DNA from: Paramoeba atlantica
Lineage: Eukaryota; Protista; Discosea
Direction: 5' to 3'
Assembly (NCBI GenBank): GCA_977017575.1
Contig: CDRNVI010000046.1
Span: 1-64,000 of the forward strand
Length of the DNA: 64,000 nucleotides
Both the position numbers and the translations under genes were made by a program. This document shows, piece after piece, positions 10,143 to 63,948 of the stretch (the stretch's first letter is position 1; every line of letters starts with the position of its first letter). The notes below the pieces were generated by a model. The model saw only the letters and a program-made list of their open reading frames with translations, did not search any database and had not been told where the DNA came from.

Positions 10143-10415
10143 TAAAAAAGAATTATTGTTAACATTGAGGGAGATACGGAGTATCTAACTCGCTTACTAA
10201 GGTTAATTCCAAAAACTGAAAAAGATCGCCAAAAAAACATAAGATCGAGGTTTTTCAAAATTCCAAAACGTAGCAGTAGGTCATTAGATGAACTCTTAAA
10301 TACTCTAAAAAACATCTAAAACAACCTTATTTCCCAAATTTTAGAACATTTTTCGTAAAAAAAAGTGCGTGTGCAAAGGTCTGCGATACGACAAACTGGT
10401 TGACTAAGGAGCGTC

Positions 10416-10493
10416 CTTTGAGTAGTCCAGTTGGTAAAGGGGTTCCATTTTGACGCTGGACGTCCGCGGTTCGATTCCCGACATCGACATTTT
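10416..10493 (+). pseudogene. tRNA-like sequence with A/B boxes and TTTT
   Basis: TAGTCCAGTTGGTAAAG...GGTTCGATTCCCGACATCGACATTTT. Acceptor and T stems do not pair fully; the 3' end resembles the SINE-like head (ATCGACA). Confidence 0.6.
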
Positions 10494-10700
10494 ACTAAAA
10501 CAATCAAAAAAAAATTATTTGCTCAAAATCGCAAAAAAAAAACAAATTGGGAACAATTTTTTTTTCAGATTTTTTTTCTCGAAAACGTGGCCAGTTGGCC
10601 ACCAAAAGCACGGTTTGCATTTTGTATATGTATAGAGAGAAAAATAATGAGCAGGTCCGAGTGGTAGTGTGCAGCTACAGTGCCCGTGAGAGAGTAAGTG

Positions 10701-10735
10701 AAGATAAATAAAGATACAGTTTCTGTACCTTGTTG
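10701..10735 (+). other. Spliced-leader exon copy (35 nt) forming the 5' end of retrotransposon 1
   Basis: AAGATAAATAAAGATACAGTTTCTGTACCTTGTTG. It contains GATACAGTTTCTGTAC, the conserved kinetoplastid SL core as recalled for T. cruzi, ends in TTG like SL exons, and is not followed by the GTA of the SL intron. Confidence 0.8.
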
Positions 10736-10764
10736 TACTAACTGTTATCCTCCCCTACTGGGGC

Positions 10765-13700
10765 ATGGCACTTCCCCCCTCCACCTCTGCCCCCCAAGCG
10801 CAAGGCGACCTCCCTCGAGGATCTGCTGGCGCAAAATCATCGCGTAAGCACAGCTTCCACTTCACTCAGCAGCGCGCAATACCGATTAAAATCAGACACT
10901 CTACTTCCTCGCTTTGGATATACTTCTCCGATATTCACGCGGCGGCCTCCTTCCTTACTGAAAAGAAACACTTTAATACAGAAATCACAGCGGAGCTTTC
11001 CTTGGCACGCACTTTGGATACTGGAGCGAAGAGAACCGATGGTATTCTAATCGAGAAATGCACCTTACAAGAAGTGATGGACGAAGAAGCTTGTGAACAC
11101 TTTGTGTTCAAAGAAACTGCGCCGCCCCACCGCATTTTTCGACACGCCAGCTGGACCGCGGCGCACGCAGACGAAGTCCTGAATCTCAGCCAACAATACT
11201 CTTGCCCTGGCACACTCGGTAGGGCGATTAAGAAGAAACTGGCTGGTCACGATATCCCAGGATTGGCATCCTTCGACATAACCCACGTATCGCAGAGGGA
11301 ACAGACGTCCGACGAAATCCCTTGGGAAAATCCCAAGATCTCGTATGATGAGCCATTCGCAATTCGCGCGCCGAGGCAACCGAATGATTCTCGAGGAACA
11401 CGGTCGTTACGTACGCAGCCGTGCGCGCACCGATGCCTAAACAAACTAACATGTCTCCATCCATGCTGTAAAGTGGGCATTGAATCCGAACCTATTCCCG
11501 ACCCTGCCTCCGATCCGAACGCGCGCCAGCTCGGTGAAGCAGGTTCCATGGTTGACGCTTCGCCACATTCAACAGCGTCCAGACGACCTGAGTCCACGCG
11601 TTCGCAGCCGTGCGCACACCGATGCCTAAGCAAACGAACATGTCTACATCCGTGCTGTAAAGTGGGCATTGAATCCGAGCCTATTACCGACCCTGCCTCC
11701 GATCTGAATGCTCGTCAGCTCGTTGAAGCGGCTCCTACTGCTCTAGTAGCAGTGCAGCAAACAGCCTCCAGACCTGGGTATACGCTTTCACAGCCCTGCG
11801 CGTATCGATGTCTAAACAAACTAAAATGCCTTCACCCATGTTGCAAAATAGGCGGTGAATGTGATCCGGCCTCTCAAGCAGGCACGCACCGACCCACGGA
11901 AACGATTCAGAGTCCCCACACCGACTCGACACAACTACGAGATGAGCCACACCAGACTATGTACAGCACAACAAGGCGGCCATGCAAGCATGTCTGTCGG
12001 GACAAACAGAATTGCAAACATGGATGTTGCAAAGTTGGCGTGCTGGTCGATAGTTCTACACCCACCGACCCCAGTAGACCTGGAATTCCACATAATGAAA
12101 CCTATGTTGCCTCCACTCGTGATCTGCACGCGCAGCACATACAGCCAACATCTGCAAGGAAAATTTCTGACACATCTACGGTACCGGAGGGGGAAGAATC
12201 CTCGCACAGACCCTGCAAACACCTGTGCCACAACAAGGAAGAATGTAAGCACAAGTGTTGTAAGGAAGGTGTCCAAAGCCCAGTTAAAGATACCCGATCG
12301 GGCTCGAGTCGCTGGAGCCTGCGCAATCTTCTTTCATGGGGCTTCACCACAGGGAGCACGCGTACCAACGAAAACACAGCCCCTGCACGCACAAGGGATG
12401 GCCATACAACCGGATCCGCAGCGCAACGTTACCCCGAGACGCACAGGAACATGCCACAGGACCAACAGCAAGCCGAAACGACCTCACATCACACACAGGC
12501 CCGAATAGATGTGATTGAAGAAACTGAGACACAGGTGCAGGCTACAACACAGCAGGATTTACCACATCATGACACGCAACCAAATAGTATACCGAATGTA
12601 CGCACGATTCTGCAATCACAACGGATGAGAACGCGCAACGATCGTTCAGGAAGCCCAGAAACTGCGGAAGACTTGCTGAGTACCTTGCGTACGATTGAAG
12701 GAGGGCGAGTAATGGCTAGTCTTTCTCATGAGCAATGGCAACGCGCAATCAAGAAGTCGTTCGAACGATGTGAGAAATACCTTAAACCAGCTGCAACCCC
12801 AACTGAAGCACTGCGACATGCCGATTTGTTAACTGCCTGCATAGCAGTCTCGGCTTATGAAATCGCGCGGGAGGCTGACCCAACGAAAGGATTCAAGCTA
12901 CGTTCGACGACTGGCCACACCAAACGTGCTTCACGACCTCTCAGCTACGATCGCTCAGCAAAGGAACTTTCTGGACATATCCGCCAATTAAAACGTACCC
13001 TCTCTTACACACACGGCCGCTCGGAAAGAGATCGCCTGATACGCAACATAAAAGAAGCCACGAAAGCCCGCAACCTCTACACAGAAGAAGCAAATCTCCT
13101 GCGACGTGAAAGGGAGAAAAGATGGGTGACGGACAGATTTCAACGGAACCCCTGGACGGCAGGAGGGGAATGCCTCGACAATAACGAGAAGATGCGAAAA
13201 CAGCCAACGATTTTCCCGAATTGTCCACAGGCAGATATTGAAGCGTTCTTCAAGGACACACTAAGCATTGGCAACGAAACCCACACTCTACCCCCCACTG
13301 ATCTTCTTGGCGCTGGAAACGAAAGCGAAATGAAGTGGGAAGATATTGACGTGCAAACCATAGCCGCGGCTATCTCCTCCAAGCGACCGTCCGCTGCACC
13401 AGGTCCTGACACCATAAGTAACGCCTTCCTCCGACGCTGCACTGAGCTGTACCCCTTCATCGCCCAAGTATTCAACGACCTACTCAAACACTCCGTAGGT
13501 CCAACCCACTGGAAACAAGCGGTGACTCGACTCATCCACAAAGGGGGAGCTACGGATAAACTGTCGAACTGGCGCCCTATCAGCCTGACCAGCTGTCTGG
13601 GGAAGCTACTCCACTCAATCATAGGACACAAACTTCTGAGTCACGCTGTCAGCACAGGGATCATCGACACGACCATACAAAAAGGCTTTCTCCCCAATGT

Positions 13701-15606
13701 CAATGGAACCATCGAACACACGCAAGCGCTTTGTGAACTGCTGGATTTTCAGAGGCAGCACAAACGGCAATACTGCTTGGGTCAATTCGACCTGAAAAAC
13801 GCCTTTGGTTCTCTTCCACACTCGATCCTCTTCCAAGTATTACAATGGGCAAAGGTGTCGCCGATTATCATCGAATATGTTCACTCCCTCTATACCAGTG
13901 CTTCTCTCCGAGTCAAGTGTGCTGAGGGGTTGACTAACCACATTCCCGTTGAACGAGGCGTTCTTCAAGGCGACACCCTATCTCCTGTGCTATTCAACCT
14001 TGCGATGGAGGTAGTTTTAAGGTACCTTCGATCCAGCTTTCCAGGATATGGCATCACATGGGGCGGGCAAGAATCATTCCTTAAGGCGTTTGCGGACGAC
14101 CTTGCCGTCATTACCAAATCACCCGAAGAAATGCAGCATGTTACTAACGCCCTGGTAAAGGTGCTCGCCAGATTAGGCATGCGGCTAAATGTACAGAAAT
14201 GTCGGCTTCAGTATATGGCTGTAGCGGATGGAGGATACAAAACCCACAGACCGCGCATCCGTGCCGGCGGCGAAAGCATACCCCACGTTTGCGACAAAGG
14301 CAGTCAGTTTCTGGGCATGACGCTAGCGCCTGGAGCCCAACAAGGGAAAGTGTTGTTCAAGAGTCTCCGTACACAACTACGCCACTGGCTTACCAACGTA
14401 TCTGAAAGTGCCATGGATACGCCCGCCCGCCTCTGGGTCTACAATAACGTCATTATTTCCCGTCTACGCTACGTTCTGACGGTAAATCCGGGAATCACAC
14501 TGAATTTCATCCTGCGGCTGCAAAAGCTTGCGACTACACACATTCGGAAATGGGTGAATATAGCCAAAACTGCAACCAGCGAACTTCTCTATTCTGAGCG
14601 GGGGTGGGCCTTAACTAGTTTCTCAAAGCTGTGGATACTCTGCACGAGTACACTGGTCGAGCAAATGCAGAAATCACGTGACCCGGCTGTGCAACAGGCT
14701 TTAAGACACCGCATCCGCAGGGAACTGCACAAGCGCTCAACGGGACACGTCCAACCAGTAGTTGAACTGTACGACCGACGAGAAGACCGTGTGGCGACAC
14801 GGCGGTTCATTGAGAGTGAATACGAGCGACACCTTTCCGAATCCGTGCAACGACGGGCTCCCATAGCGGCACAGTGGTTCCGTATGGCCACTGAGGACGA
14901 ACTTGCGAAAGACTTTGCTGCTGCGGTATGTAACATCAACAGTGAGGCACTCTCCCGGTTTACTGCATCTGTGTTGACCCAAACACCACTACCTACTCGT
15001 TCAGCACTGCGTCGTTGGGGTCTAAGTACGCACACGGACACAAAGTGTCCCATTTGCAATGAGGAGGTGCAGACAGTTCGACATGTCCTCACAGGGTGCA
15101 AGGTGGCCCTTGAACAGGGCCGCTACACGTTCCGCCATGATCTTATACTCCACGCTATCGCAGATGCCGTAAGAGCATCCCCAGAAACAGCGCAGTACCA
15201 CTTTGATCTTTCTCTTTACCGAAACCCCCCAACATGGCTAAGTCAACAGGACACGGCCCTTAGACCTGATGGGTGGATCAAGCTACATAATGGTACTGAG
15301 TTCATACTTGAGCTCACTTCTCCGTGGGAGGAAAACTTTTTATCCTCACATGAGCGGAAAGTGCGGAAGTACGGGAATCTGTTTCTCGAAAGGAAAATGA
15401 CTAACCCGGCAACCTTTCTTCTTGTCATCGAAGTGGGGGCCAGAGGGAAGCTCAACTCCTCTACGCGAGCGCTCAACTCACTTTTCGGAGGTAACAAGGC
15501 CACCGCCTCGCAATGTCGACAGAAGCTTGTCAAAAGAGCAATACGAGGAAGTTTCGCGATTTTTCAAAACCGCGATAACCCGAGCTGGACGGAAGCCAGC
15601 ATATAG
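10765..15606 (+). CDS. Non-LTR retrotransposon polyprotein: 5x C/H zinc motif, RT, CCHC knuckle, restriction-like endonuclease
   Basis: RT motifs WRPISLTSCLGK, QKGF, DLKNAFGS, GVLQGDTLSP, FADD; knuckle CPICNEEVQTVRHVLTGC; endonuclease RH...LRPDG...ELTSPWEEN...K..KY. Confidence 0.95.
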   Translation: MALPPSTSAPQAQGDLPRGSAGAKSSRKHSFHFTQQRAIPIKIRHSTSSLWIYFSDIHAAASFLTEKKHFNTEITAELSLARTLDTGAKRTDGILIEKCTLQEVMDEEACEHFVFKETAPPHRIFRHASWTAAHADEVLNLSQQYSCPGTLGRAIKKKLAGHDIPGLASFDITHVSQREQTSDEIPWENPKISYDEPFAIRAPRQPNDSRGTRSLRTQPCAHRCLNKLTCLHPCCKVGIESEPIPDPASDPNARQLGEAGSMVDASPHSTASRRPESTRSQPCAHRCLSKRTCLHPCCKVGIESEPITDPASDLNARQLVEAAPTALVAVQQTASRPGYTLSQPCAYRCLNKLKCLHPCCKIGGECDPASQAGTHRPTETIQSPHTDSTQLRDEPHQTMYSTTRRPCKHVCRDKQNCKHGCCKVGVLVDSSTPTDPSRPGIPHNETYVASTRDLHAQHIQPTSARKISDTSTVPEGEESSHRPCKHLCHNKEECKHKCCKEGVQSPVKDTRSGSSRWSLRNLLSWGFTTGSTRTNENTAPARTRDGHTTGSAAQRYPETHRNMPQDQQQAETTSHHTQARIDVIEETETQVQATTQQDLPHHDTQPNSIPNVRTILQSQRMRTRNDRSGSPETAEDLLSTLRTIEGGRVMASLSHEQWQRAIKKSFERCEKYLKPAATPTEALRHADLLTACIAVSAYEIAREADPTKGFKLRSTTGHTKRASRPLSYDRSAKELSGHIRQLKRTLSYTHGRSERDRLIRNIKEATKARNLYTEEANLLRREREKRWVTDRFQRNPWTAGGECLDNNEKMRKQPTIFPNCPQADIEAFFKDTLSIGNETHTLPPTDLLGAGNESEMKWEDIDVQTIAAAISSKRPSAAPGPDTISNAFLRRCTELYPFIAQVFNDLLKHSVGPTHWKQAVTRLIHKGGATDKLSNWRPISLTSCLGKLLHSIIGHKLLSHAVSTGIIDTTIQKGFLPNVNGTIEHTQALCELLDFQRQHKRQYCLGQFDLKNAFGSLPHSILFQVLQWAKVSPIIIEYVHSLYTSASLRVKCAEGLTNHIPVERGVLQGDTLSPVLFNLAMEVVLRYLRSSFPGYGITWGGQESFLKAFADDLAVITKSPEEMQHVTNALVKVLARLGMRLNVQKCRLQYMAVADGGYKTHRPRIRAGGESIPHVCDKGSQFLGMTLAPGAQQGKVLFKSLRTQLRHWLTNVSESAMDTPARLWVYNNVIISRLRYVLTVNPGITLNFILRLQKLATTHIRKWVNIAKTATSELLYSERGWALTSFSKLWILCTSTLVEQMQKSRDPAVQQALRHRIRRELHKRSTGHVQPVVELYDRREDRVATRRFIESEYERHLSESVQRRAPIAAQWFRMATEDELAKDFAAAVCNINSEALSRFTASVLTQTPLPTRSALRRWGLSTHTDTKCPICNEEVQTVRHVLTGCKVALEQGRYTFRHDLILHAIADAVRASPETAQYHFDLSLYRNPPTWLSQQDTALRPDGWIKLHNGTEFILELTSPWEENFLSSHERKVRKYGNLFLERKMTNPATFLLVIEVGARGKLNSSTRALNSLFGGNKATASQCRQKLVKRAIRGSFAIFQNRDNPSWTEASI

Positions 15607-15723
15607 CGATGATGAAAAGCTTAAGGGAAACCCGTTTTGTGCGGGGTTTATACATGATCTGCGTGTATTTTTCTTAGGTGACAATCTCTGCAGTCATACT
15701 GCATGATAAAAAAAAAAAAAAAA

Positions 15724-16150
15724 TACTGCCACGTGAGGCAGTGGTTGCACAGTGATGCAGTGCAAGTACAGTGGAACGTGCGAGAGTAAGTGCACTGCCA
15801 CTGTAAGTACAGTGGTACGTGAAAGAGTAAGTGCCACGTGCCGAGGCGACACCCCGTCTGTGGGGTTTATACCTGTAACATCATCATCAAGTGCCACGTG
15901 CATACGTGTACACGTGGCACTTACTCTTTCGTGGCAGTGGTGTACTGCCACGTGGGGCAGTGACTGCAGTGATGCAGTGCAGCTGCATCACGTACGTGAA
16001 AGAGTAAGTCTACTGCCACGTGAGGCAGTGAACGCAGTGTAGATGCAGTGGCGCGTGAGAGAGTCAGTGACTGCAGTGTAGCTGCAGTGGCACGTGAGAG
16101 AGTAAGTGTACTGCCACGTGAGGCAGTGACTGTATTGATGCAGTGTGTAG
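15724..16150. repeat. Degenerate CACGTG/palindrome-rich satellite; target of element 1
   Basis: Recurrent ACTGCCACGTGAGGCAGT, GTGARAGAGTAAGT and TGCAGTG units; a matching piece lies upstream of element 1 at 10661-10700. Confidence 0.85.
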
Positions 16151-16260
16151 CTAGAGTGGAGCGCGGGTGCAGGTGGACTGCACATGAAACACCCACATGA
16201 GAGACCGTGCGCCACCAGTGGCTGCACTGGTGTTCCTTTTGGAGAGTGTTGTTACAGATC

Positions 16261-40758: not shown

Positions 40759-43700
40759 TGTTGTTTCTGTACCTTGTTGAATTATTTTTCAATTTTGTAC
40801 TAAACGTATCTTCCGGAGCATGGCCTCCAATGACCCCTTACCTGCTCCTGTCGCGCACGACGACCTCCCTCGAGGATCTGTCAGCGCGAGGCGACACAGT
40901 CAAGCGTTTCACTTTAGCAAAAGTCGCGCAGTATCTATGAAGCTGCGCTTATCAGAAAGCACACTCTGGTCTTACTTTCCTGACACACATGCAGCAGCTG
41001 TTTTCCTTACCGAAGAGTTTATTCTCGAGCGTACACACGGCTGAAGCTTCCTTCGGTAAGACCCTCCGAACAGGAGCCAAAAGAGATGATGGCTTAGTCA
41101 TCGAGAAATGCAACCTGCAAGAAGTTATCGATCATGAAGCATGTGACTACGTGGAGTACCCAGAAATACAGGACCCCCATCGAATCTTCCGGCACGCGAG
41201 CTGGGCCTCAGCGTACAGCGACGAACACTTGGATCTTTGTTCTCACTATGCCTCCGCTCAGACATTTGGAAAGGCAGTTCTGAAGAAACTAAATGGGTGC
41301 AACGTACCCGGTCTATCCCATCTTTCAGTACGACATATAGCCCCTGTTAACCAGACGGAGAACCAGTCTTGGAACCGATGTTCAATCACATTCGACGCCC
41401 CTTACAAAATCAGAGCCGGTGATCACTCCCTACCACTCCTCAACAAACCCGACAAAACTCCCATGCCCTGTGCCCATCGATGCCGCAATGAAGCAACATG
41501 CCTACATCCATGCTGCAAAATTATCGACACGACACCTGCCACCGCAGACCCAACCTTAACAGACGATGTACCTTTCACCCAACCAATGACGACAGTCAAC
41601 CCAAGCACTCCTGTCATGAATCCTGAAAGACGTCCCTGTCGGCACACATGTCGAGACAAACAGGCATGTGGACATATATGCTGCAAAGTGGGAGTACTCG
41701 TTGAACAGAGTACGTCTACGCATACACATCATGAGGCGCCATCCAGAGCGGGAGTTCCTCATAACCACTTCCTTCCTCCCTTAGTTAACACCCGTAACCA
41801 CCCCGCTACGCCGTCTGCAGGAATAGAGAGCCCGGGGTCCGGCGATTCTCGTGCACCCCCATCACCAATACCAACCAATCCTGAGCACGTGAACCTGCGC
41901 AACTCGACATCCAACATCCAGTACCGTCCGTGCCTGCACCAGTGTAGTGACAAAACGATGTGTAAACATCAATGTTGCAAAACTGGGGTTCGTGTCTCCC
42001 CAGAGGAGGCAACGAACGCGAGATGGTCACTAAGGGGTCTTCTTCCCTGGCCTAACCAAAGTTCCAGCGCCCCGATAACGACGAGGGCCTCGTCAACGGA
42101 GAGAAATATCACAGCTGAGACCCTTCGAGACGACGGAAATAGGCAAAGACAAATCCAGCAAATGGAACACCCAACAAGTAATACAGGACGCGAAACCGGG
42201 CTCCCAGAAAGCACACCTCAAAGTACCAGTAGCGGAGTACTGCAAGGAGAACGACGCCGTCCATGTGCGCATAAATGCAATGACAAGACACAATGCAAGC
42301 ACGATTGCTGTAAAAAGGGGGTGCTTCTTAAAGCTGGAGAGATGGTCTGCTCTGCGCTACTATGGACAGCGCGTGGACTCGCTGGTATCCCAGGCAACCC
42401 TCCGATAGCGCGCGATGCTCCCGTGACGCAGTCAACTGTTCGAACTGAATCAACAGAGTCCACGAGAAGGATAAATCACACTCGGGTGAATCCCGGTGAA
42501 TTCCCAGTGTATGTAATTCCTAAGTCTCCCGAACAGCAACAGGTGCAGGAAACCCCGGAAGTTCCCCTTCCATTACCTCTACCAGCCCCCGATACCTCCC
42601 TAGCAACACTGCTCCCAGAAACAGTCCTCCGAGCAACGGCTCCCGATACGACACCTGCGCCAGAATACCAAACAATACTTCAGAGAGTCGCACGAGCTCA
42701 TGAAGTTACCGAGAGTTCTACACCTACGCCCTCTGAGCTTGACATTCTGTTGCGGACATCACGCACTATTGCGGGGGGCCGCGCACTGGTGCGCTTCAAT
42801 GACCAGCAGTGGAGCCAGGTATTATCAAAGATTGAGATGCGCTGTAGGGAGTTCCTGCGACCTGCAACGAACGCGGACGATGCACTGCTTAAAGCGGATA
42901 TACTATCGGCCATACTGTCGGTGTCTGTCTTCGAAATCGCTCAAGAGATTGACCCTAGGCGAGGTTTCATGCTCCGTACAAACATGGGCCACGCAAAACG
43001 CGGATTGCGCCCACTGGCCATAGACAGAACACAAAAACAGCTTGTTGCACACATTCGCCAACTAAAACGTTCACTTGCCTTCATGCATGGCGCAGAGCGC
43101 AACAAGCAGAGAGGGATGATCAAGCAAGCAGAAAAGGCGCTGAAGTTCTACGAAGAAGCCACTCTTCAGAAACAAGAAATCGAACGCAGATGGGCCCTCA
43201 CCCGTTTCCAGCGAAATCCCTGGACAGCCGCTGGTATGTGTCTGGATAGCCATGAGGAAGAGGCGCGTGAACACGGTACAACCTTCCCAACAGCGTCCAT
43301 GAGTGAAATCGAAACCTTCTTTGCGGAGTCTATGTCTAAACCCGAGACCAACTATACCATTCCATCCGACGAGTTCCTTGGCCCACGCCCGCTAGAATCC
43401 ATGAATTGGACAGAAATTGATGCCGGTACTATTGCTGCTGCATTGGTCTCGAAACGGGCAGGCGCCGCTCCGGGATCAGACACCGTGACGAATGCACTTC
43501 TGAAACGTTGCTCAAGCATCTACACCTATATCGCACAAATTTTTAATGATGTCCTTCAATTCGGTATCTGCCCACTTACGTGGAAAACTGCTGTAACCCG
43601 ACTGATACATAAAGGTGGCGATCCTAAGCGCATCGAAAATTGGAGGCCAATTAGCCTCACCAGCTGCCTTGGAAAGCTCTTTCACTCCATTATTGGACAC

Positions 43701-45792
43701 CGAATCCTTCAACACGCCCTGGAGACGAATGCGATCGACACAACTATCCAGAAAGGCTTTCTGCCTGGTATGAATGGAACGGTAGAGCACACTCAAGCCC
43801 TATGTGAACTCATTGAGCACCAACGAAGCCATAAACGGCAATACTGTCTTTCCCAGTTCGACATTAAAAACGCATTCGGATCGATCCCTCATAATATTCT
43901 CTTCCAGTCTCTCCGTTGGGCCCGCGTCCCCTCACCCATCATCCAATACATTGAAAACCTTTACCATAAGGCCTCTCTCCAAATCAAATGCAGTGAAGGA
44001 CTCACCAAACCAATCGAAGTCGGACGGGGCGTACTACAAGGTGACACTCTCTCCCCAGTACTATTCAACCTCTCAATGGAGTTGGTGCTGCGTTTTGTCC
44101 GGTCTAGCTGTCCAAAATACGGTATTACATGGAACGACGACGAGGTGTTCCTCAAGGCTTTTGCCGACGATCTTACCATTCTCACGAACACTCCCAAAGA
44201 AATGCAAAACGCGACCCATGTTTTGGTGAAAGCTTTATCCCGTGTAGGAATGAGGCTCAATGTACAGAAATGCAGGATGCAACATATGGCAATGACTACA
44301 GACTCAGGTTACATGACTCGCCGCCCGCAGATATTGGTCGATGGCGCCCAAATCCCCCACATTTGCGACCAAGGCAGCACATTCTTAGGAATGACACTCG
44401 CCCCGGGAGCCCAACAAGGGAACATTCTCTTCCAAAAGTTGCAGGCCCGCATGCGCACGTGGTTACGAAATATATCTAACAGCGCCCACGAACTACCTGC
44501 CCGTTTATGGATCTACAACAATGGTATTATCTCCCGTCTTCGATACTGCTTTGTTGTGCACGCGTGTCTTAGTTTTAATCACGTCCTGCGCCTTCAAAGG
44601 TATGCAACGAATGCGATTCGGAAATGGCTAAATCTCGCAAAAACGGCTACCAGCGAGCTCTTATACTCCCAACACGGTTGGAACCTCACCAGCCTATCCA
44701 AACTTTGGCTCCTCTGTGCAGCAGAAACGGCGAAACAGATGGAAAAATCCCGCGACCCCGCGGTTCTGCATGCATTGCGCGTCAGGATACGGAGGGAAGA
44801 AAACAAACGGTCATCTGGACATGTACGCCCACCTTCCGAAATCTACAGCACAGATAGAAGTGAAGTACGAAGAATGATTGGCGAGGAATATGAGAGACAC
44901 CTCTCCCAAGCAGTACAGCGCCGTACCTCTGTTGCCGGTCAATGGTTCCGCATAGCAACCGAAGAAGACTTAGCTAAGGACTTTGCCGCAGCACTTTGTG
45001 ATTTGAAAAGCGAGAGCCTCTCACGTTTCACAGCCTCCGTCCTGACACAAGCTCCCTTGCCGACACGAGTAGCACTCCGCAAATGGGGAATGTCGAGCCA
45101 CGTAAACGACGAATGTCCCATATGTGAAACAGAGCAACAAAGCTCCCGGCACGTTCTCTCTGGCTGCGCGAAATCCTTAGAGCAAGGGAGATACACCCTG
45201 CGACACAATATGATCTTACTAGCCCTCGCAAACGCTGTAGCGACCTCTCCGTCGACGAATGCGTTCCATTTCGATCTTCCACAGTTTTCCACTGTCCCGA
45301 CTTGGCTCACGGAATTAGATACAGAGCTCAGACCGGACGGGTGGGTAAGGCTGCATAATGGTGAGGAATACATAATAGAGCTAACTTCTCCATGGGAGGA
45401 GAACTTTTCACACGCCCACGACCGCAAAGTTGCGAAATACTCCAGGTTGTATCATACAAGGAAATTGCAACACCCACGCACGTTTCTCTTGGTGTTCGAG
45501 GTGGGTGCCAGGGGGAAACTTGCTAGCTCCATTCGACCGCTCAACTCTCTTTTTATGGGAGAAAAATATATTGTTTCTGAGTGTCGAAAGGAAATGACGA
45601 GAAGTGCCCTGCGTGGCAGCTTCATCATATTCCAAAAACGCGACTCAAAGACCTGGAACAATGAAACACAGTTTGCTGAGGTCGCCTAAAGGTGAATGGA
45701 TACCACACGTTCTGTGCGTGTGTTCTGGACATTTTATTTTCCTGTATCCATTCATAACCAATCTCTGCACTATAAGTGTATGACAAATAAAC
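40759..45792 (+). mobile_element. RLE-type non-LTR retrotransposon, element 2 (one frameshift near the 5' end)
   Basis: Homologous to element 1 throughout. ATG at 40820, frameshift at ~41005-41025. SL-like sequence at 40759-40779; conserved 3' hairpin at 45761-45783. Confidence 0.92.
40820..45689 (+). pseudogene. Frameshifted non-LTR polyprotein: 4x C/H zinc motif, RT, CCHC, RLE
   Basis: 40820-41044 (MASNDP...YFPDTHAAAVFL) continues in the 40989-45689 frame: WRPISL, QGDTLSP, FADD, CPICETEQQSSRHVLSGC, LRPDG, ELTSPWEEN. Confidence 0.92.
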
Positions 45793-59216: not shown

Positions 59217-61223
59217 TTAGTCTACCTCTTCAACCTTGGGTCCCGAGCTCGCCGGTGGGGCTGGGGCGGCTCCCCCGGCACCTGGGAATCCCTCCGGCAT
59301 TCCTCCAGGAAATCCCCCGGGCATCCCACCGGGAAACCCTCCCGGGGCTGCACCCTCCGCCCCTGGGGCGCCTCCACCCTGCTGGTACATCTTGGTCATG
59401 ATGGGTGTGCATTTCTGCTCCAGCTCCTTCTGCCGCCCTTCGTACTCCTCCTTGCTCGCCTCCTGACTGGACTCAAGCCACTTGATGGTTTCCTCCACGG
59501 CATCGAGAAGGGTCTGCTTGTCGCCCGCGTCCAGCTTTCCCCCCACATTGGGGTCATTCGCGGTGTTCTTCATGCTGTACGCGTAGTTCTCGAGTCCGTT
59601 CTTCGCCTCGATACGCTCACGTTGCTTCCGGTCCTCCTCCTCGAACTTTGCGGACTCGTTCACCATGCGCTCGATCTCCTCCTTGCTGAGACGCCCCTTG
59701 TCGTTGGTGATGGTGATCTGGTTCTTCTTCCCCGTGCCCTTCTCCTCGGCGCTGACGTTCAGGATACCATTGGCGTCGATGTCAAACGTGACTTCGATTT
59801 GTGGCACCCCGCGCGGCGCGGGTGGAATTCCCGAGAGATCGAATGTGCCGAGAAGGTGGCAGTCGCGTGTCATCGCGCGCTCACCCTCGAACACCTGGAT
59901 ATGCACCCCCGGTTGGTTGTCGCTGTACGTGGAGAAGGTCTGGCTCTTCTTGGTCGGGATCGTCGTGTTGCGCTTGATCAGGGACGTCATGACACCCCCG
60001 GCGGTTTCGATACCCAACGTCAGCGGGGCGACATCCAGGAGAAGAAGTCCCTCCGTCTGCTTACTCTTCCCGCCGGTGAGGATGTAGGCTTGCACCGCGG
60101 CACCGTACGCCACAGCCTCGTCCGGGTTAATACTCTTGTTGAGTTCCTTTCCGCCAAAGAAGTCGGAGACGAGCTGCTGCACTTTGGGAATACGAGTCGA
60201 ACCACCGACCAGAACCACGTCGTGCACCGTGCGCTTGTCAATCTTCGCATCCGTCAGGACTTGTTCCACCGGCTTGAGTGTTGAGCGGAAGAGGTCCGCG
60301 CAAAGCTCCTCGAATCGCGCACGGGTGATGCTCGTGTAGAAGTCAATCCCCTCAAAAAGAGAGTCAATCTCCACGGAACTCTGAGCCGCGGAAGACAGAG
60401 TACGCTTGGCTCGCTCGCACGCGGTGCGAAGACGGCGTAGTGCTCGCTGGTTCTGCGACAGATCCTTCTTGTGCTTTCGCTTAAATTCCTCGACAAAGTG
60501 GTTCACGAGACGGTTGTCAAAGTCCTCACCACCGAGATGGGTGTCTCCCGCCGTGGCCTTGACCTCGAAGATTCCACCATCGATGGTGAGCAGAGTGACG
60601 TCAAAGGTGCCGCCTCCGAGATCAAAGATGAGTACGTTCCGTTCTTGTTGGTCCGAGATCTTATCCAGGCCGTACGCAATCGCCGCCGCCGTGGGCTCGT
60701 TGATGATTCGAAGCACTTCCAGTCCGGCAATCGAGCCCGCGTCCTTCGTGGCCTGTCGTTGGGAGTCGTTGAAGTACGCCGGGACGGTGACCACCGCCTT
60801 CTTGACCTCCTTACCGAGATATGCCTCCGCAATCTCCTTCATCTTAATCAACACCATGGAGCTAATCTCCTCCGGCGTGAAGGTCTTTGCCTCGCCCTTG
60901 TACTGGACCTCCATCACGGGCTTCTCGTCCCCCTGGGAACGTACCTTAAAGGGCCAGTGCTTCATGTCGCTCTGAACAACGGAGTCGGAGATCTTACGCC
61001 CGATTAGTCGCTTCGCATCAAACACACTGTTGGTCGGATTCATCGCTACCTGGTTCTTCGCGGCATCCCCAATCAGACGTTCAGTGTCCGTGAAGGCCAC
61101 GTAGGACGGAGTCGTGTAGTTCCCCTGGTCATTCGCAATGATTACCACACGCTCGTTCTGCCACACCCCAACACAGGAGTAGGTGGTCCCGAGATCGATA
61201 CCAATAGCTCCTTCGTACGTCAT
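59217..61223 (-). CDS. HSP70: Cytosolic HSP70, tandem copy 1
   Basis: [23 protein letters not shown]-type repeats, C-terminal EEVD. Confidence 0.99.
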
Positions 61224-61582
61224 CAAGTTAATAATAAAATGGAGAGATATGCAAAAGCAATGAAGCTATAGAATTAAATACATTTGAATTCAAGTTCCAA
61301 CTAACAGACGTAATAATGCCGTGATATTGGGCGCGTAGTGGTCTTTTTTAAAGAACATATTGAAGCCAAAGCGGTAAAAAACACGACGCACTCATTTGCT
61401 CCAAAGTTGTTAGAACCAAAGTACGCTAAACAAGGTCAAACTAAATTATTTTACCCCAATTTTCCGAATTACGCACAAATAATTGCGTGGTTTACATTGT
61501 TAAATAATTTATCTATCAAATATGTGATCCGAAAAGAAAAAAGGAAAACAAGCAACCCGTTGGAGCAGTCCTAACCCTTGAT

Positions 61583-63589
61583 TTAGTCTACCTCTTCAAC
61601 CTTGGGTCCCGAGCTCGCCGGTGGGGCTGGGGCGGCTCCCCCGGCACCTGGGAATCCCTCCGGCATTCCTCCAGGAAATCCCCCGGGCATCCCACCGGGA
61701 AACCCTCCCGGGGCTGCACCCTCCGCCCCTGGGGCGCCTCCACCCTGCTGGTACATCTTGGTCATGATGGGTGTGCATTTCTGCTCCAGCTCCTTCTGCC
61801 GCCCTTCGTACTCCTCCTTGCTCGCCTCCTGACTGGACTCAAGCCACTTGATGGTTTCCTCCACGGCATCGAGAAGGGTCTGCTTGTCGCCCGCGTCCAG
61901 CTTTCCCCCCACATTGGGGTCATTCGCGGTGTTCTTCATGCTGTACGCGTAGTTCTCGAGTCCGTTCTTCGCCTCGATACGCTCACGTTGCTTCCGGTCC
62001 TCCTCCTCGAACTTTGCGGACTCGTTCACCATGCGCTCGATCTCCTCCTTGCTGAGACGCCCCTTGTCGTTGGTGATGGTGATCTGGTTCTTCTTCCCCG
62101 TGCCCTTCTCCTCGGCGCTGACGTTCAGGATACCATTGGCGTCGATGTCAAACGTGACTTCGATTTGTGGCACCCCGCGCGGCGCGGGTGGAATTCCCGA
62201 GAGATCGAATGTGCCGAGAAGGTGGCAGTCGCGTGTCATCGCGCGCTCACCCTCGAACACCTGGATATGCACCCCCGGTTGGTTGTCGCTGTACGTGGAG
62301 AAGGTCTGGCTCTTCTTGGTCGGGATCGTCGTGTTGCGCTTGATCAGGGACGTCATGACACCCCCGGCGGTTTCGATACCCAACGTCAGCGGGGCGACAT
62401 CCAGGAGAAGAAGTCCCTCCGTCTGCTTACTCTTCCCGCCGGTGAGGATGTAGGCTTGCACCGCGGCACCGTACGCCACAGCCTCGTCCGGGTTAATACT
62501 CTTGTTGAGTTCCTTTCCGCCAAAGAAGTCGGAGACGAGCTGCTGCACTTTGGGAATACGAGTCGAACCACCGACCAGAACCACGTCGTGCACCGTGCGC
62601 TTGTCAATCTTCGCATCCGTCAGGACTTGTTCCACCGGCTTGAGTGTTGAGCGGAAGAGGTCCGCGCAAAGCTCCTCGAATCGCGCACGGGTGATGCTCG
62701 TGTAGAAGTCAATCCCCTCAAAAAGAGAGTCAATCTCCACGGAACTCTGAGCCGCGGAAGACAGAGTACGCTTGGCTCGCTCGCACGCGGTGCGAAGACG
62801 GCGTAGTGCTCGCTGGTTCTGCGACAGATCCTTCTTGTGCTTTCGCTTAAATTCCTCGACAAAGTGGTTCACGAGACGGTTGTCAAAGTCCTCACCACCG
62901 AGATGGGTGTCTCCCGCCGTGGCCTTGACCTCGAAGATTCCACCATCGATGGTGAGCAGAGTGACGTCAAAGGTGCCGCCTCCGAGATCAAAGATGAGTA
63001 CGTTCCGTTCTTGTTGGTCCGAGATCTTATCCAGGCCGTACGCAATCGCCGCCGCCGTGGGCTCGTTGATGATTCGAAGCACTTCCAGTCCGGCAATCGA
63101 GCCCGCGTCCTTCGTGGCCTGTCGTTGGGAGTCGTTGAAGTACGCCGGGACGGTGACCACCGCCTTCTTGACCTCCTTACCGAGATATGCCTCCGCAATC
63201 TCCTTCATCTTAATCAACACCATGGAGCTAATCTCCTCCGGCGTGAAGGTCTTTGCCTCGCCCTTGTACTGGACCTCCATCACGGGCTTCTCGTCCCCCT
63301 GGGAACGTACCTTAAAGGGCCAGTGCTTCATGTCGCTCTGAACAACGGAGTCGGAGATCTTACGCCCGATTAATCGCTTCGCATCAAACACACTGTTGGT
63401 CGGATTCATCGCTACCTGGTTCTTCGCGGCATCCCCAATCAGACGTTCAGTGTCCGTGAAGGCCACGTAGGACGGAGTCGTGTAGTTCCCCTGGTCATTC
63501 GCAATGATTACCACACGCTCGTTCTGCCACACCCCAACACAGGAGTAGGTGGTCCCGAGATCGATACCAATAGCTCCTTCGTACGTCAT
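61583..63589 (-). CDS. HSP70: Cytosolic HSP70, tandem copy 2
   Basis: Same protein sequence; repeat unit of 2366 bp. Confidence 0.99.
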
Positions 63590-63948
63590 CAAGTTAATAA
63601 TAAAATGGAGAGATATGCAAAAGCAATGAAGCTATAGAATTAAATACATTTGAATTCAAGTTCCAACTAACAGACGTAATAATGCCGTGATATTGGGCGC
63701 GTAGTGGTCTTTTTTAAAGAACATATTGAAGCCAAAGCGGTAAAAAACACGACGCACTCATTTGCTCCAAAGTTGTTAGAACCAAAGTACGCTAAACAAG
63801 GTCAAACTAAATTATTTTACCCCAATTTTCCGAATTACGCACAAATAATTGCGTGGTTTACATTGTTAAATAATTTATCTATCAAATATGTGATCCGAAA
63901 AGAAAAAAGGAAAACAAGCAACCCGTTGGAGCAGTCCTAACCCTTGAT

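What the first reader, a model, noticed from the sequence alone, without database searches (positions are those of the whole stretch)
10701..10764. Retrotransposon whose 5' end is a spliced leader lacking the four cap-4 nucleotides
Seen: element 1 starts, right after the split target repeat, with AAGATAAATAAAGATACAGTTTCTGTACCTTGTTG (35 nt). This is followed by a 29-nt leader and the ATG, with no GT-type SL intron. Established: kinetoplastid SL exons are 39 nt with the core ACAGTTTCTGTAC...TTG, and the first four nucleotides carry cap-4 methylations that impede reverse transcriptase. Inference: this is SL positions 5-39, copied when a trans-spliced element RNA was reverse-transcribed up to the cap. 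This differs from CRE/SLACS/CZAR and NeSL, which insert into SL genes. Here the element would use host trans-splicing as its 5' processing and carry the SL into new sites.
Basis: partly seen in the sequence, partly recalled or inferred. Interest (0 to 1): 0.92.

Follow-up and report, generated by a model that had tools for sequence, protein, structure and literature searches.

The report
Retrotransposon headed by 28-nt spliced-leader copy
A young jumping gene in a kinetoplastid-type protist carries a DNA copy of the last 28 letters of the cell's own spliced leader at its front. This shows it was copied from leader-bearing RNA, but the front end is not set by the cap-4 nucleotides as first proposed.

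Summary
The sequence at 10701-10735 is real, but it is not "SL positions 5-39". I found about 35 true SL RNA genes in the genome. They lie in tandem arrays linked to 5S rRNA genes, each with a 38-nt exon followed by a GTATGAG intron. Only 10708-10735 (28 nt) matches the exon, at nt 11-38. The first 7 nt (AAGATAA) look like a short re-copy of SL nt 14-19 plus one A.

Element 1 (10701-15723) is an intact R2-like LINE with a restriction-like endonuclease. It ends in a 16-A tail and sits in a satellite repeat with no target duplication, not in an SL gene. Five near-identical copies lie elsewhere, so it was active recently.

Head length depends on the family. This LINE family and its partner SINEs start at SL nt 11 (28 nt). 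Other retroelement families reach nt 3 (36 nt). None starts at nt 5. A few SINE copies with the same junction reach nt 3, so the template RNA probably carried a full SL.

Trans-splicing is the likeliest source of the head. In other families the SL junction falls exactly after an AG. For this LINE it is not shown: no donor copy was found and no RNA data exist. One LINE of another family is fused to a real SL gene, which keeps co-transcription open as a rival.

The 28-nt boundary is the same register as the CRE/SLACS/CZAR insertion site. The scan had already noted SL-headed elements elsewhere in this genome.

The parts
10641..10700 (.). Upstream half of the split satellite unit (target DNA), ending in GAGAGTAAGTG
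   Evidence: Joined to 15724 onward, it aligns colinearly with the intact unit at 16080-16128.
10701..10707 (+). 7 extra nt (AAGATAA) that belong to neither the target nor SL nt 4-10. Read as a 5' stutter: a re-copy of SL nt 14-19 plus one A.
   Evidence: Similar stutters occur in other copies: ATAA+ATAAAG in L064 and L092, and ATAAAGAT repeated three times in L069.
10708..10735 (+). Exact copy of host SL exon nt 11-38 (28 nt), with no intron
   Evidence: Identical to the exon of about 35 SL RNA genes. The same 28-nt head is found in 10 of 20 junctions of this LINE family.
10736..10764 (+). 29-nt 5' UTR: TACTAAC motif plus a CCCC-TACT-GGGG hairpin directly before the ATG. It contains no AG.
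   Evidence: The motif and hairpin are conserved across subfamilies, while the loop varies.
10765..15606 (+). Intact ORF of 1613 aa: five Cys-rich N-terminal repeats, reverse transcriptase, zf-RVT, then a C-terminal CCHC motif and a restriction-like endonuclease
   Evidence: RVT_1 E=1e-30 and zf-RVT. Best solved relatives are R2 proteins, aligned over residues 861-1578. Translation.
15607..15707 (+). 3' UTR ending in the family's terminal hairpin motif (CAATCTCTGCAG..CTGCATGAT)
   Evidence: The motif is shared with element 2 and with the partner SINEs.
15708..15723 (+). Poly(A) tail, 16 A
15724..16160 (.). Downstream half of the split unit and further satellite units (target)
40760..40763 (+). 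Element 2: GTTG, equal to the last 4 nt of an SL, directly before a second SL piece
   Evidence: The full form (SL end plus TTTCTGTACCTTGTTG) occurs 14 times exactly in the genome.
40764..40779 (+). Element 2: SL nt 23-38, starting right after the AG of ACAG
40780..45791 (+). Element 2, a related subfamily. It has the long 5' UTR form (AATTATTTTTCAATTTTG+TACTAAACG) and a homologous ATG at 40820. That ATG is out of frame with the long ORF 40989-45689, so a frameshift is likely. It has the same 3' terminal motif and only a short A-rich end.

Best explanation
Element 1 is a recently active, intact, single-ORF non-LTR retrotransposon of the R2-like group, which carries a restriction-like endonuclease. 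It inserted by target-primed reverse transcription into a satellite repeat.

Its 5' head is a DNA copy of the host spliced-leader exon. The head is present because the RNA lineage that was reverse-transcribed carried the SL at its 5' end. The most likely source is trans-splicing of an element-containing transcript at some point in the lineage. After that the relic was carried along in copies, because SL-headed copies have no AG at the junction.

In this LINE family and the SINEs it mobilises, the copied head usually ends at SL nt 11, giving 28 nt. A few re-copied or untemplated bases are often added there; in this copy they are the 7 nt AAGATAA. That boundary is a property of the family's copying or integration machinery, or of its template's 5' end. 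It is not a cap-4 effect.

Shown: the identity of the head with the host SL, its place inside the insert, the family-specific head length, and recent mobility. Inferred: trans-splicing as the source, and the cause of the nt-11 end.
For: SL gene and exon: about 35 tandem genes with a shared upstream sequence, a 38-nt exon, a GTATGAGAAGC intron and linkage to 5S rRNA genes.

The head is inside the insert: the empty site can be rebuilt from a neighbouring satellite unit.

Recent mobility: five other copies are 99-100% identical over 600 nt and have unrelated flanks.

The head tracks the host SL: it is 28/28 identical between subfamilies whose next 330 nt are only 73-80% identical. A 31%-identical LINE on a metagenome contig (L098) carries a different SL variant, ending CTTTATTG, in the same position.

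The template carried a longer SL: 5 of 70 SINE copies with the same TTG|GTAC junction extend into SL nt 6-10 (0.07 expected by chance), and two reach nt 3.

Trans-splicing signatures in this genome. (a) Two other element families carry a short 5' UTR segment twice, once before and once after the SL copy. L001 comes from a tyrosine-recombinase element according to an earlier scan note; L045 is an unclassified family. The upstream segment follows an AG, and the SL is joined at exactly that nucleotide. (b) Two SINE variants (L092, L088) have the SL joined 14-15 nt further in, exactly after a polypyrimidine tract plus AG. (c) The form "SL end plus relic restarting right after ACAG" occurs 14 times, and partly in element 2.

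Family-specific head lengths.
Against: No RNA data exist: only assembled contigs of runs of unknown type were available, and the one possible RNA run held nothing.

For this LINE family no unspliced donor was found. The only candidate, CTTTTTTTAG before the 5' UTR in L085, has a twin locus but no SL-headed product.

The three junction forms among near-identical copies (SL joined to AATTATTTCATCATTTG+TACTAAC, to ATTTG+TACTAAC, or directly to TACTAAC as here) do not follow AG. They look like slippage or deletions rather than alternative splice sites.

One LINE of another family is fused to a genuine SL gene promoter and exon at G000:C41:280821-280892. So co-transcription from an SL gene could supply the SL without splicing.

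No copy of this LINE family with a full-length SL head was found.

The 14 double relics may be one amplified subfamily. Their flanks could not be read.
Confidence: 0.55

Rival explanations
1. The 35 nt are SL nt 5-39 because reverse transcriptase stopped at the four hypermethylated cap-4 nucleotides of a trans-spliced element mRNA.
For: The 35-nt length equals 39 minus 4. The SL core and 3' end are present.
Against: The host exon is 38 nt, and nt 4-10 (TTTAACG) differ from 10701-10707 (AAGATAA). Family heads end at nt 11. Other families' heads reach nt 3. Only 1 of 76 relics examined starts at nt 4 and 1 at nt 5.
Confidence: 0.02
2. The SL head comes from co-transcription, not trans-splicing. 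Source copies sit directly behind the exon of an SL RNA gene, a CRE-type integration whose upstream junction lies at the exon end. They are transcribed from the SL promoter, so their RNA starts with a genuine SL. Dispersed copies such as element 1 are off-target insertions of that RNA.
For: One locus has the 19-nt SL-gene upstream sequence, the complete exon and then a LINE 5' UTR. The junction SL|AATTATTT is shared by 164 copies of several LINE families and needs no AG. The 28-nt head equals the stretch of exon that lies 3' of the CRE/SLACS/CZAR insertion point, between nt 11 and 12 of a 39-nt exon (PMC5814959). A CRE1-type second nick downstream of the first would make that stretch a target duplication abutting the element's 5' end (PMC3636483, figure 6 legend).
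Against: The fused locus belongs to another family, not element 1's. None of about 35 SL genes is interrupted within the exon. The genome has no poly(A)+SL 11-38+intron, no poly(A)+intron and no poly(A)+SL 11-38 arrangement. This model does not explain the AG-bounded junctions in the SINEs and the two UTR-duplicating families.
Confidence: 0.18
3. The 28-nt head is an inherited 5' module, like the Pr77 hallmark shared by trypanosomatid LINEs and SINEs. It was captured from the SL long ago. Transcription or processing starts at its first base, and it is kept identical to the SL by selection. There is no ongoing SL acquisition.
For: The 5' end at nt 11 is sharp and shared by the LINE and its SINEs. 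Extension into nt 10, 9 and 8 in the sampled loci is no more frequent than chance. SL-headed copies cannot be re-spliced at the same junction. L1Tc/ingi provide a precedent for an internal promoter (PMC1874656).
Against: 5 of 70 SINE heads extend into true SL nt 6-10 against 0.07 expected, and two reach nt 3. New SL junctions occur after AG in SINE variants. The metagenome relative carries its own host-type SL variant.
Confidence: 0.12
4. The head is added at the end of cDNA synthesis by a template jump of the reverse transcriptase. The jump goes from the variable 5' end of the element RNA to the 3' end of an SL-bearing molecule that ends at G38, for example the free SL exon made in the first step of trans-splicing.
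For: In the five junction variants within this LINE family the SL 3' end is complete and the element side varies, without an AG. Stutters and extra bases at the 5' ends are typical of template jumping.
Against: It does not explain why the standard junction SL|AATTA is the same in subfamilies 25-30% diverged. A free exon would give heads reaching nt 1-3 rather than nt 11. The free exon is a rare, spliceosome-bound intermediate (own knowledge).
Confidence: 0.08

Closest known systems
CRE clade LINEs (CRE1/2, SLACS, CZAR) of trypanosomatids
   Same: Kinetoplastid hosts, a single ORF with RT plus a C-terminal restriction-like endonuclease, a poly(A) tail, and an intimate link with the SL. The 28-nt head here equals the part of the exon that lies 3' of their insertion point, nt 11/12 of 39 (PMC5814959, PMC12278014).
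   Different: Those elements sit inside SL RNA genes. Element 1 and its relatives sit at unrelated sites (a satellite, (GT)n runs, genes) and carry the SL piece with them at their own 5' end. No SL gene here is interrupted. RT phylogeny against CRE references was not done.
SL relics on retrogenes of dinoflagellates
   Same: An SL exon written into DNA at the 5' end of retrocopied sequences. The relics are truncated and sometimes tandem, and are read as repeated cycles of trans-splicing and retroposition (PMC5585692, PMC12014239).
   Different: There the SL marks cellular retrogenes and has 22 nt. Here it heads autonomous LINEs, their SINEs and at least one other retroelement type, with a family-specific end point.
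Pr77 hallmark of L1Tc/ingi/NARTc/RIME/SIDER
   Same: A short 5' module shared by a kinetoplastid LINE and its non-autonomous partners (PMC1874656, PMC8190864).
   Different: Pr77 is an element-own internal promoter and ribozyme that gives unspliced transcripts. The module here is the host SL itself. Those elements carry an AP endonuclease, whereas this one has a restriction-like endonuclease. No ribozyme family matched in the window.
R2 elements
   Same: Best structural relatives by sequence. R2 RNA carries co-transcribed host sequence at its 5' end, and R2 RT is known for template jumps and extra bases at 5' junctions (own knowledge).
   Different: R2 is specific for 28S rDNA. The host sequence at its 5' end is target-derived rather than carried to new sites.
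NeSL-1 of nematodes
   Same: A LINE with a restriction-like endonuclease that is associated with spliced-leader genes.
   Different: It inserts into SL1 genes and encodes a protease. No protease domain was found here, and the element does not lie in an SL gene.

Membership tests
Non-LTR retrotransposon with restriction-like endonuclease (R2-like group) | Reverse transcriptase domain of LINE type | tested here: met
   PF00078 E=1e-30 at residues 925-1185.
Non-LTR retrotransposon with restriction-like endonuclease (R2-like group) | C-terminal CCHC motif plus a PD..(D/E)xK nuclease, and no AP endonuclease | tested here: met
   Alignment to R2 protein structures runs over residues 861-1578. A CPIC..H..C motif and RPDG..ELT..K can be read in the translation. 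No PF03372 hit. Catalytic activity was not tested.
Non-LTR retrotransposon with restriction-like endonuclease (R2-like group) | Poly(A) or A-rich 3' end, variable 5' ends, no LTRs | tested here: met
   16-A tail. 5'-truncated heads of 16-18 nt in sister copies.
CRE clade (CRE1/2, SLACS, CZAR) | Insertion into SL RNA genes between exon nt 11 and 12 | tested here: not met
   Element 1 splits a satellite unit. Sister copies have unrelated flanks. None of about 35 SL genes is interrupted. No poly(A)+SL 11-38+intron arrangement exists.
CRE clade (CRE1/2, SLACS, CZAR) | RT groups with CRE references in a phylogeny | not tested
   No CRE/SLACS reference protein was available from the tools. The named hits are uninformative.
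NeSL | Insertion in SL genes and a cysteine protease domain | tested here: not met
   No protease domain. The element is not in an SL gene.
Retrocopies that bear SL relics (dinoflagellate type) | SL exon sequence in DNA directly 5' of the copied RNA, without the intron | tested here: met
   10708-10735 equals exon nt 11-38 and is followed by the 5' UTR, not by GTATGAG.
Retrocopies that bear SL relics (dinoflagellate type) | The junction lies at a trans-splice acceptor (AG) of the parent transcript | tested here: inconclusive
   Met for two families with a duplicated 5' UTR segment and for two SINE variants. No parent copy was found for this LINE.
ingi/L1Tc-type LINEs with Pr77 | AP endonuclease and a Pr77 5' hallmark | tested here: not met
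   No AP endonuclease domain. The 5' end is SL-derived.

The most novel reading that the evidence does not exclude
The family's 5' end at SL nt 11 is the very phosphodiester at which CRE/SLACS/CZAR elements enter SL genes: 28 nt from the exon's 3' end in both cases. On this reading the LINE/SINE pair descends from an SL-gene-specific lineage. Its protein still recognises the SL sequence and now cuts, or stops on, its own SL-bearing cDNA or RNA at that site. The 28-nt head would then be a functional remnant of site-specific integration and would link the site-specific CRE elements to dispersed, SL-headed elements.
Probability: 0.15. Interest if true: 0.85.

Novelty: new variant of a known kind. 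Interest (0 to 1): 0.6.

Why it matters
SL relics in DNA are direct fossils of reverse-transcribed, SL-bearing RNA. In kinetoplastids the known link between LINEs and the SL is the reverse one: elements that insert into SL genes. I found no paper in the held library that describes kinetoplastid LINEs or SINEs carrying the SL at their own 5' end.

If these elements do ride on trans-spliced, cap-bearing mRNAs, they obtain a translatable 5' end without any promoter of their own. That would suit a genome transcribed polycistronically.

The family-specific head lengths (nt 3 versus nt 11) offer a natural read-out of how different reverse transcriptases finish on the same modified leader. The nt-11 coincidence offers a testable bridge to the CRE clade.

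Tried and rejected
RNA evidence. The one run search gave four runs of unknown type and one possible RNA run, all held as assembled contigs. The possible RNA run held nothing, so expression, 5' ends and SL junction reads could not be tested. One contig of run X2 joined 10735 to 14661, but only 25 nt lay on one side and the junction is absent from the assembly. I do not rely on it.

Rfam. Nothing matched in the window, so no HDV-like ribozyme or SL family. ARAGORN found no tRNA.

Donor copy. The only SL-less relative with a polypyrimidine tract plus AG (L085) has a twin with the same upstream sequence and no SL-headed product.

CRE-type arrangements. Poly(A)+SL 11-38+intron, poly(A)+intron and poly(A)+SL 11-38 all gave zero hits.

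SL variant with the ATAA duplication. There are only 3 occurrences and none is a gene.

Cross-species check. Four more metagenome contigs that encode relatives had no SL core. The closest proteins come from another assembly of the same species.

I did not try to read them by other means.

The classic SLACS paper is not held.

No structure prediction or complex prediction was run. Neither would bear on the question.

Full report
**The observation.** A 29-nt leader (10736-10764) follows, then an ATG at 10765. TACTAAC, not a GT intron, follows the final TTG. The conserved kinetoplastid core ACAGTTTCTGTAC occurs once in the window.

**Anatomy of element 1.**
- The ORF at 10765-15606 encodes 1613 aa with an RVT_1 domain (E=1e-30) and a zf-RVT domain.
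- Its best solved relatives are R2 retrotransposon proteins, aligned over residues 861-1578. That span includes the C-terminal CCHC and restriction-like nuclease region.
- A 101-nt 3' UTR and a 16-A tail end the element at 15723.
- The 30 nt upstream of 10701 plus the 30 nt downstream of 15723 align colinearly with an intact satellite unit at 16080-16128 (46 of 49 matches), with no duplication or loss.
- So the insert is exactly 10701-15723, and the SL-like head belongs to the insert, not to the target.

**The host spliced leader.**
- The 20-mer ACAGTTTCTGTACCTTGTTG occurs 968 times (up to 2 mismatches) in the 45.7-Mb genome.
- Among these are true SL RNA genes. About 35 loci share the same upstream sequence, a 38-nt exon and an intron that starts GTATGAGAAGC. 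They stand in tandem arrays of about 2.56 kb period and are linked to 5S rRNA genes.
- The exon start is placed by homology to the usual AAC start. It was not mapped on RNA.
- Against this exon only 10708-10735 match, at SL nt 11-38. The first seven letters AAGATAA differ from nt 4-10 (TTTAACG).

**The family.**
- The first 600 nt after the head find five more copies at 99-100% identity on other contigs. Two of them share flanks and may be one locus. Further subfamilies lie at about 75%, 70% and 67% identity; element 2 of this window belongs to another related one.
- All full-length 5' ends carry the SL piece, and their upstream flanks are unrelated.
- Among the near-identical copies the SL is joined at three different points: to AATTATTTCATCATTTG+TACTAAC (C45, C65/C7), to ATTTG+TACTAAC (C2, C52), and directly to TACTAAC (this window only).
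- The shorter forms do not follow an AG in the long form. The window's form can arise by slippage between two TTG triplets. I read them as deletions made during copying, not as alternative splice sites.
- The 5' UTR contains no AG at all. An SL-headed copy therefore cannot be re-spliced at or behind the old junction without losing the ATG.

**Head length is family-specific.** I examined 76 distinct relics in the fetched loci.

| Family | Junctions | Head lengths |
|---|---|---|
| This LINE family | 20 | 28 nt ×10, 29 ×2, 30 ×1, shorter ×7 |
| Partner SINE (same 3' terminal motif) | 20 | 28 nt ×8; the rest 23-31 |
| Other families | 34 | 36 nt ×16, 37-38 ×7; the rest shorter |

- The other families include further LINEs that start AATTATTTTCC, a gene-like family, a tyrosine-recombinase element and retro-copies of the SL RNA itself.
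- In the 36-nt class the head starts at C3 and is usually preceded by T or C instead of A2.
- Only one relic starts at nt 4 and one at nt 5. Reverse transcriptases in this cell therefore read through positions 3 and 4.
- The nt-11 end belongs to this LINE/SINE system.

**5' stutters.**
- The ends often show stutters. ATAAAGAT is copied three times with one extra base in L069. ATAA is doubled in L064 and in an unrelated SINE copy, L092.
- The window's AAGATAA fits this pattern as SL nt 14-19 plus one A.

**Was the template's SL full-length?**
- Genome-wide, 70 SINE copies have at least 28 nt of head in front of the same TTG|GTAC junction.
- Five of them continue into TAACG (SL nt 6-10), where 0.07 would be expected by chance. 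Two reach C3 with TT before it.
- So at least the SINE's RNA lineage carried a full SL, and nt 11 is a frequent end point rather than the start of the molecule.
- For the LINE itself no full-length head was found.
- The head is 28/28 identical between LINE subfamilies whose next 330 nt are 73-80% identical.
- A 31%-identical LINE on a metagenome contig carries a different SL variant in the same place, again about 28 nt long. The head therefore follows the host's SL.

**Source of the SL.** Three kinds of junction in this genome fall exactly after an AG, as trans-splicing predicts.
- Two other element families carry a short 5' UTR segment twice, once before and once after the SL copy. L001 comes from a tyrosine-recombinase element by an earlier scan note; L045 is unclassified. 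The upstream segment follows ..AG, and the SL is joined at that very nucleotide.
- Two SINE variants have lost GTAC...TAG, so the SL abuts the base after a polypyrimidine tract plus AG.
- The SL end is joined to a relic that restarts right after ACAG in 14 exact instances. Element 2 shows the same partly, as GTTG+TTTCTG.. at 40760-40779.

Limits on that inference:
- The most common double form, a TACCTTGTTG tandem in about half of the 84 double-SL matches, does not follow an AG and may be slippage or one amplified subfamily.
- Its flanks could not be read.
- One LINE of another family stands directly behind a genuine SL promoter and exon on contig 41. Co-transcription from an SL gene therefore remains a live rival.
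- No RNA data were available.

**The nt-11 boundary.**
- CZAR and SLACS insert between nt 11 and 12 of the 39-nt exon (PMC5814959), which leaves 28 nt of exon. The T. brucei SL string I used for the register is printed in PMC2926603 and PMC3795323.
- The head here is the homologous 28 nt, starting eight bases before the ACAG core.
- This may be chance, roughly 1 in 30. It may also mean that the family keeps a CRE-type recognition of the SL sequence.
- Against a simple CRE behaviour: no SL gene here is interrupted, no CRE-type junctions exist, and the downstream flanks of SINE and LINE insertions do not resemble the SL.
- I leave the cause of the boundary open.

**Comparison and verdict.**
- The element is a member of the LINEs with a restriction-like endonuclease. 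It fails the defining target test of the CRE clade and of NeSL. It works like the SL-relic retrocopies known from dinoflagellates, but as an autonomous LINE with partner SINEs.
- I found no paper in the held library that describes this in kinetoplastids.
- The scan had already noted SL-headed elements on other pieces of this genome and at element 2 of this window.
- New in this report: the SL gene definition, the two classes of head length, the long-headed SINE copies, the AG-bounded SINE variants, the SL-gene-fused LINE and the CRE-site coincidence.
Its cap-4 mechanism is refuted. Its broader idea, an SL carried to new sites by retrotransposition, stands, with trans-splicing as the likely but unproven source.

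Noticed in passing
window 40760-40819: Element 2 begins with GTTG followed by SL nt 23-38. That is the last 4 nt of one SL joined to a relic that restarts right after ACAG. Then comes the long 5' UTR form. Its homologous ATG (40820) is out of frame with the long ORF (40989-45689), so the copy seems to carry a frameshift.
   Followed up: partly
G000:C41:280821-280892 (not in the window): The only locus where the SL-gene upstream sequence and the complete exon are followed by a LINE 5' UTR (AATTATTTTCTTTAT) instead of the intron. It is a LINE fused to a real SL promoter. Its 3' side could not be read.
   Followed up: partly
G000:C21:271-11698 and C22:137440-155715: Head-to-tail tandem arrays, period about 2.28 kb, of units that each begin with SL|AATTATTTTCC.
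   Followed up: no
G000:C97:23409-25994 and C11:3791, 6684: SL RNA gene variants with single exon changes (A17G in two array members, A30C in two short duplicates).
   Followed up: no
L043 (G000:C6:27086) and G000:C83:133026: Retro-copies of the whole SL RNA, exon plus intron. They start at C3 after a foreign G, and L043 runs into an A-run after the intron. The SL RNA itself has been reverse-transcribed.
   Followed up: partly
window 10736-10767 and sister copies (L062-L089): A TACTAAC motif (identical to the yeast branch-point consensus) and a CCCC-N4-GGGG hairpin directly before the ATG are conserved across subfamilies. The loop varies.
   Followed up: no
window 11400-12300 (ORF residues about 215-520): Five repeats of a Cys-rich motif (PCxHxCxxKxxCxHxCCK) in the N-terminal part of the ORF. 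Two of them form a 189-nt direct DNA repeat (11410-11540 and 11599-11729). They may be a DNA-binding module.
   Followed up: no
L098 (ENA ERZ27265265 k141_1809568) 1-55: A metagenome LINE (31% identical RT, zf-CCCH domain) starts with an A-run. Next come 28 nt of a different SL type (ending ACTTTATTG), a 14-nt leader and the ATG.
   Followed up: partly
L096 2700-2960, L023, L051: A 43%-identical LINE subfamily and some SINE copies sit in long (GT)n microsatellites, with the head starting at SL nt 12-13.
   Followed up: no
window 10380-10490: A tRNA-like stretch with a GGTTCGATTCC T-arm motif just upstream of the satellite. ARAGORN calls no tRNA here.
   Followed up: no
window 59217-61226 and 61583-63592: Two tandem ORFs of 669 aa each on the minus strand, spaced 2366 nt apart. 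This is a recent tandem gene duplication.
   Followed up: no
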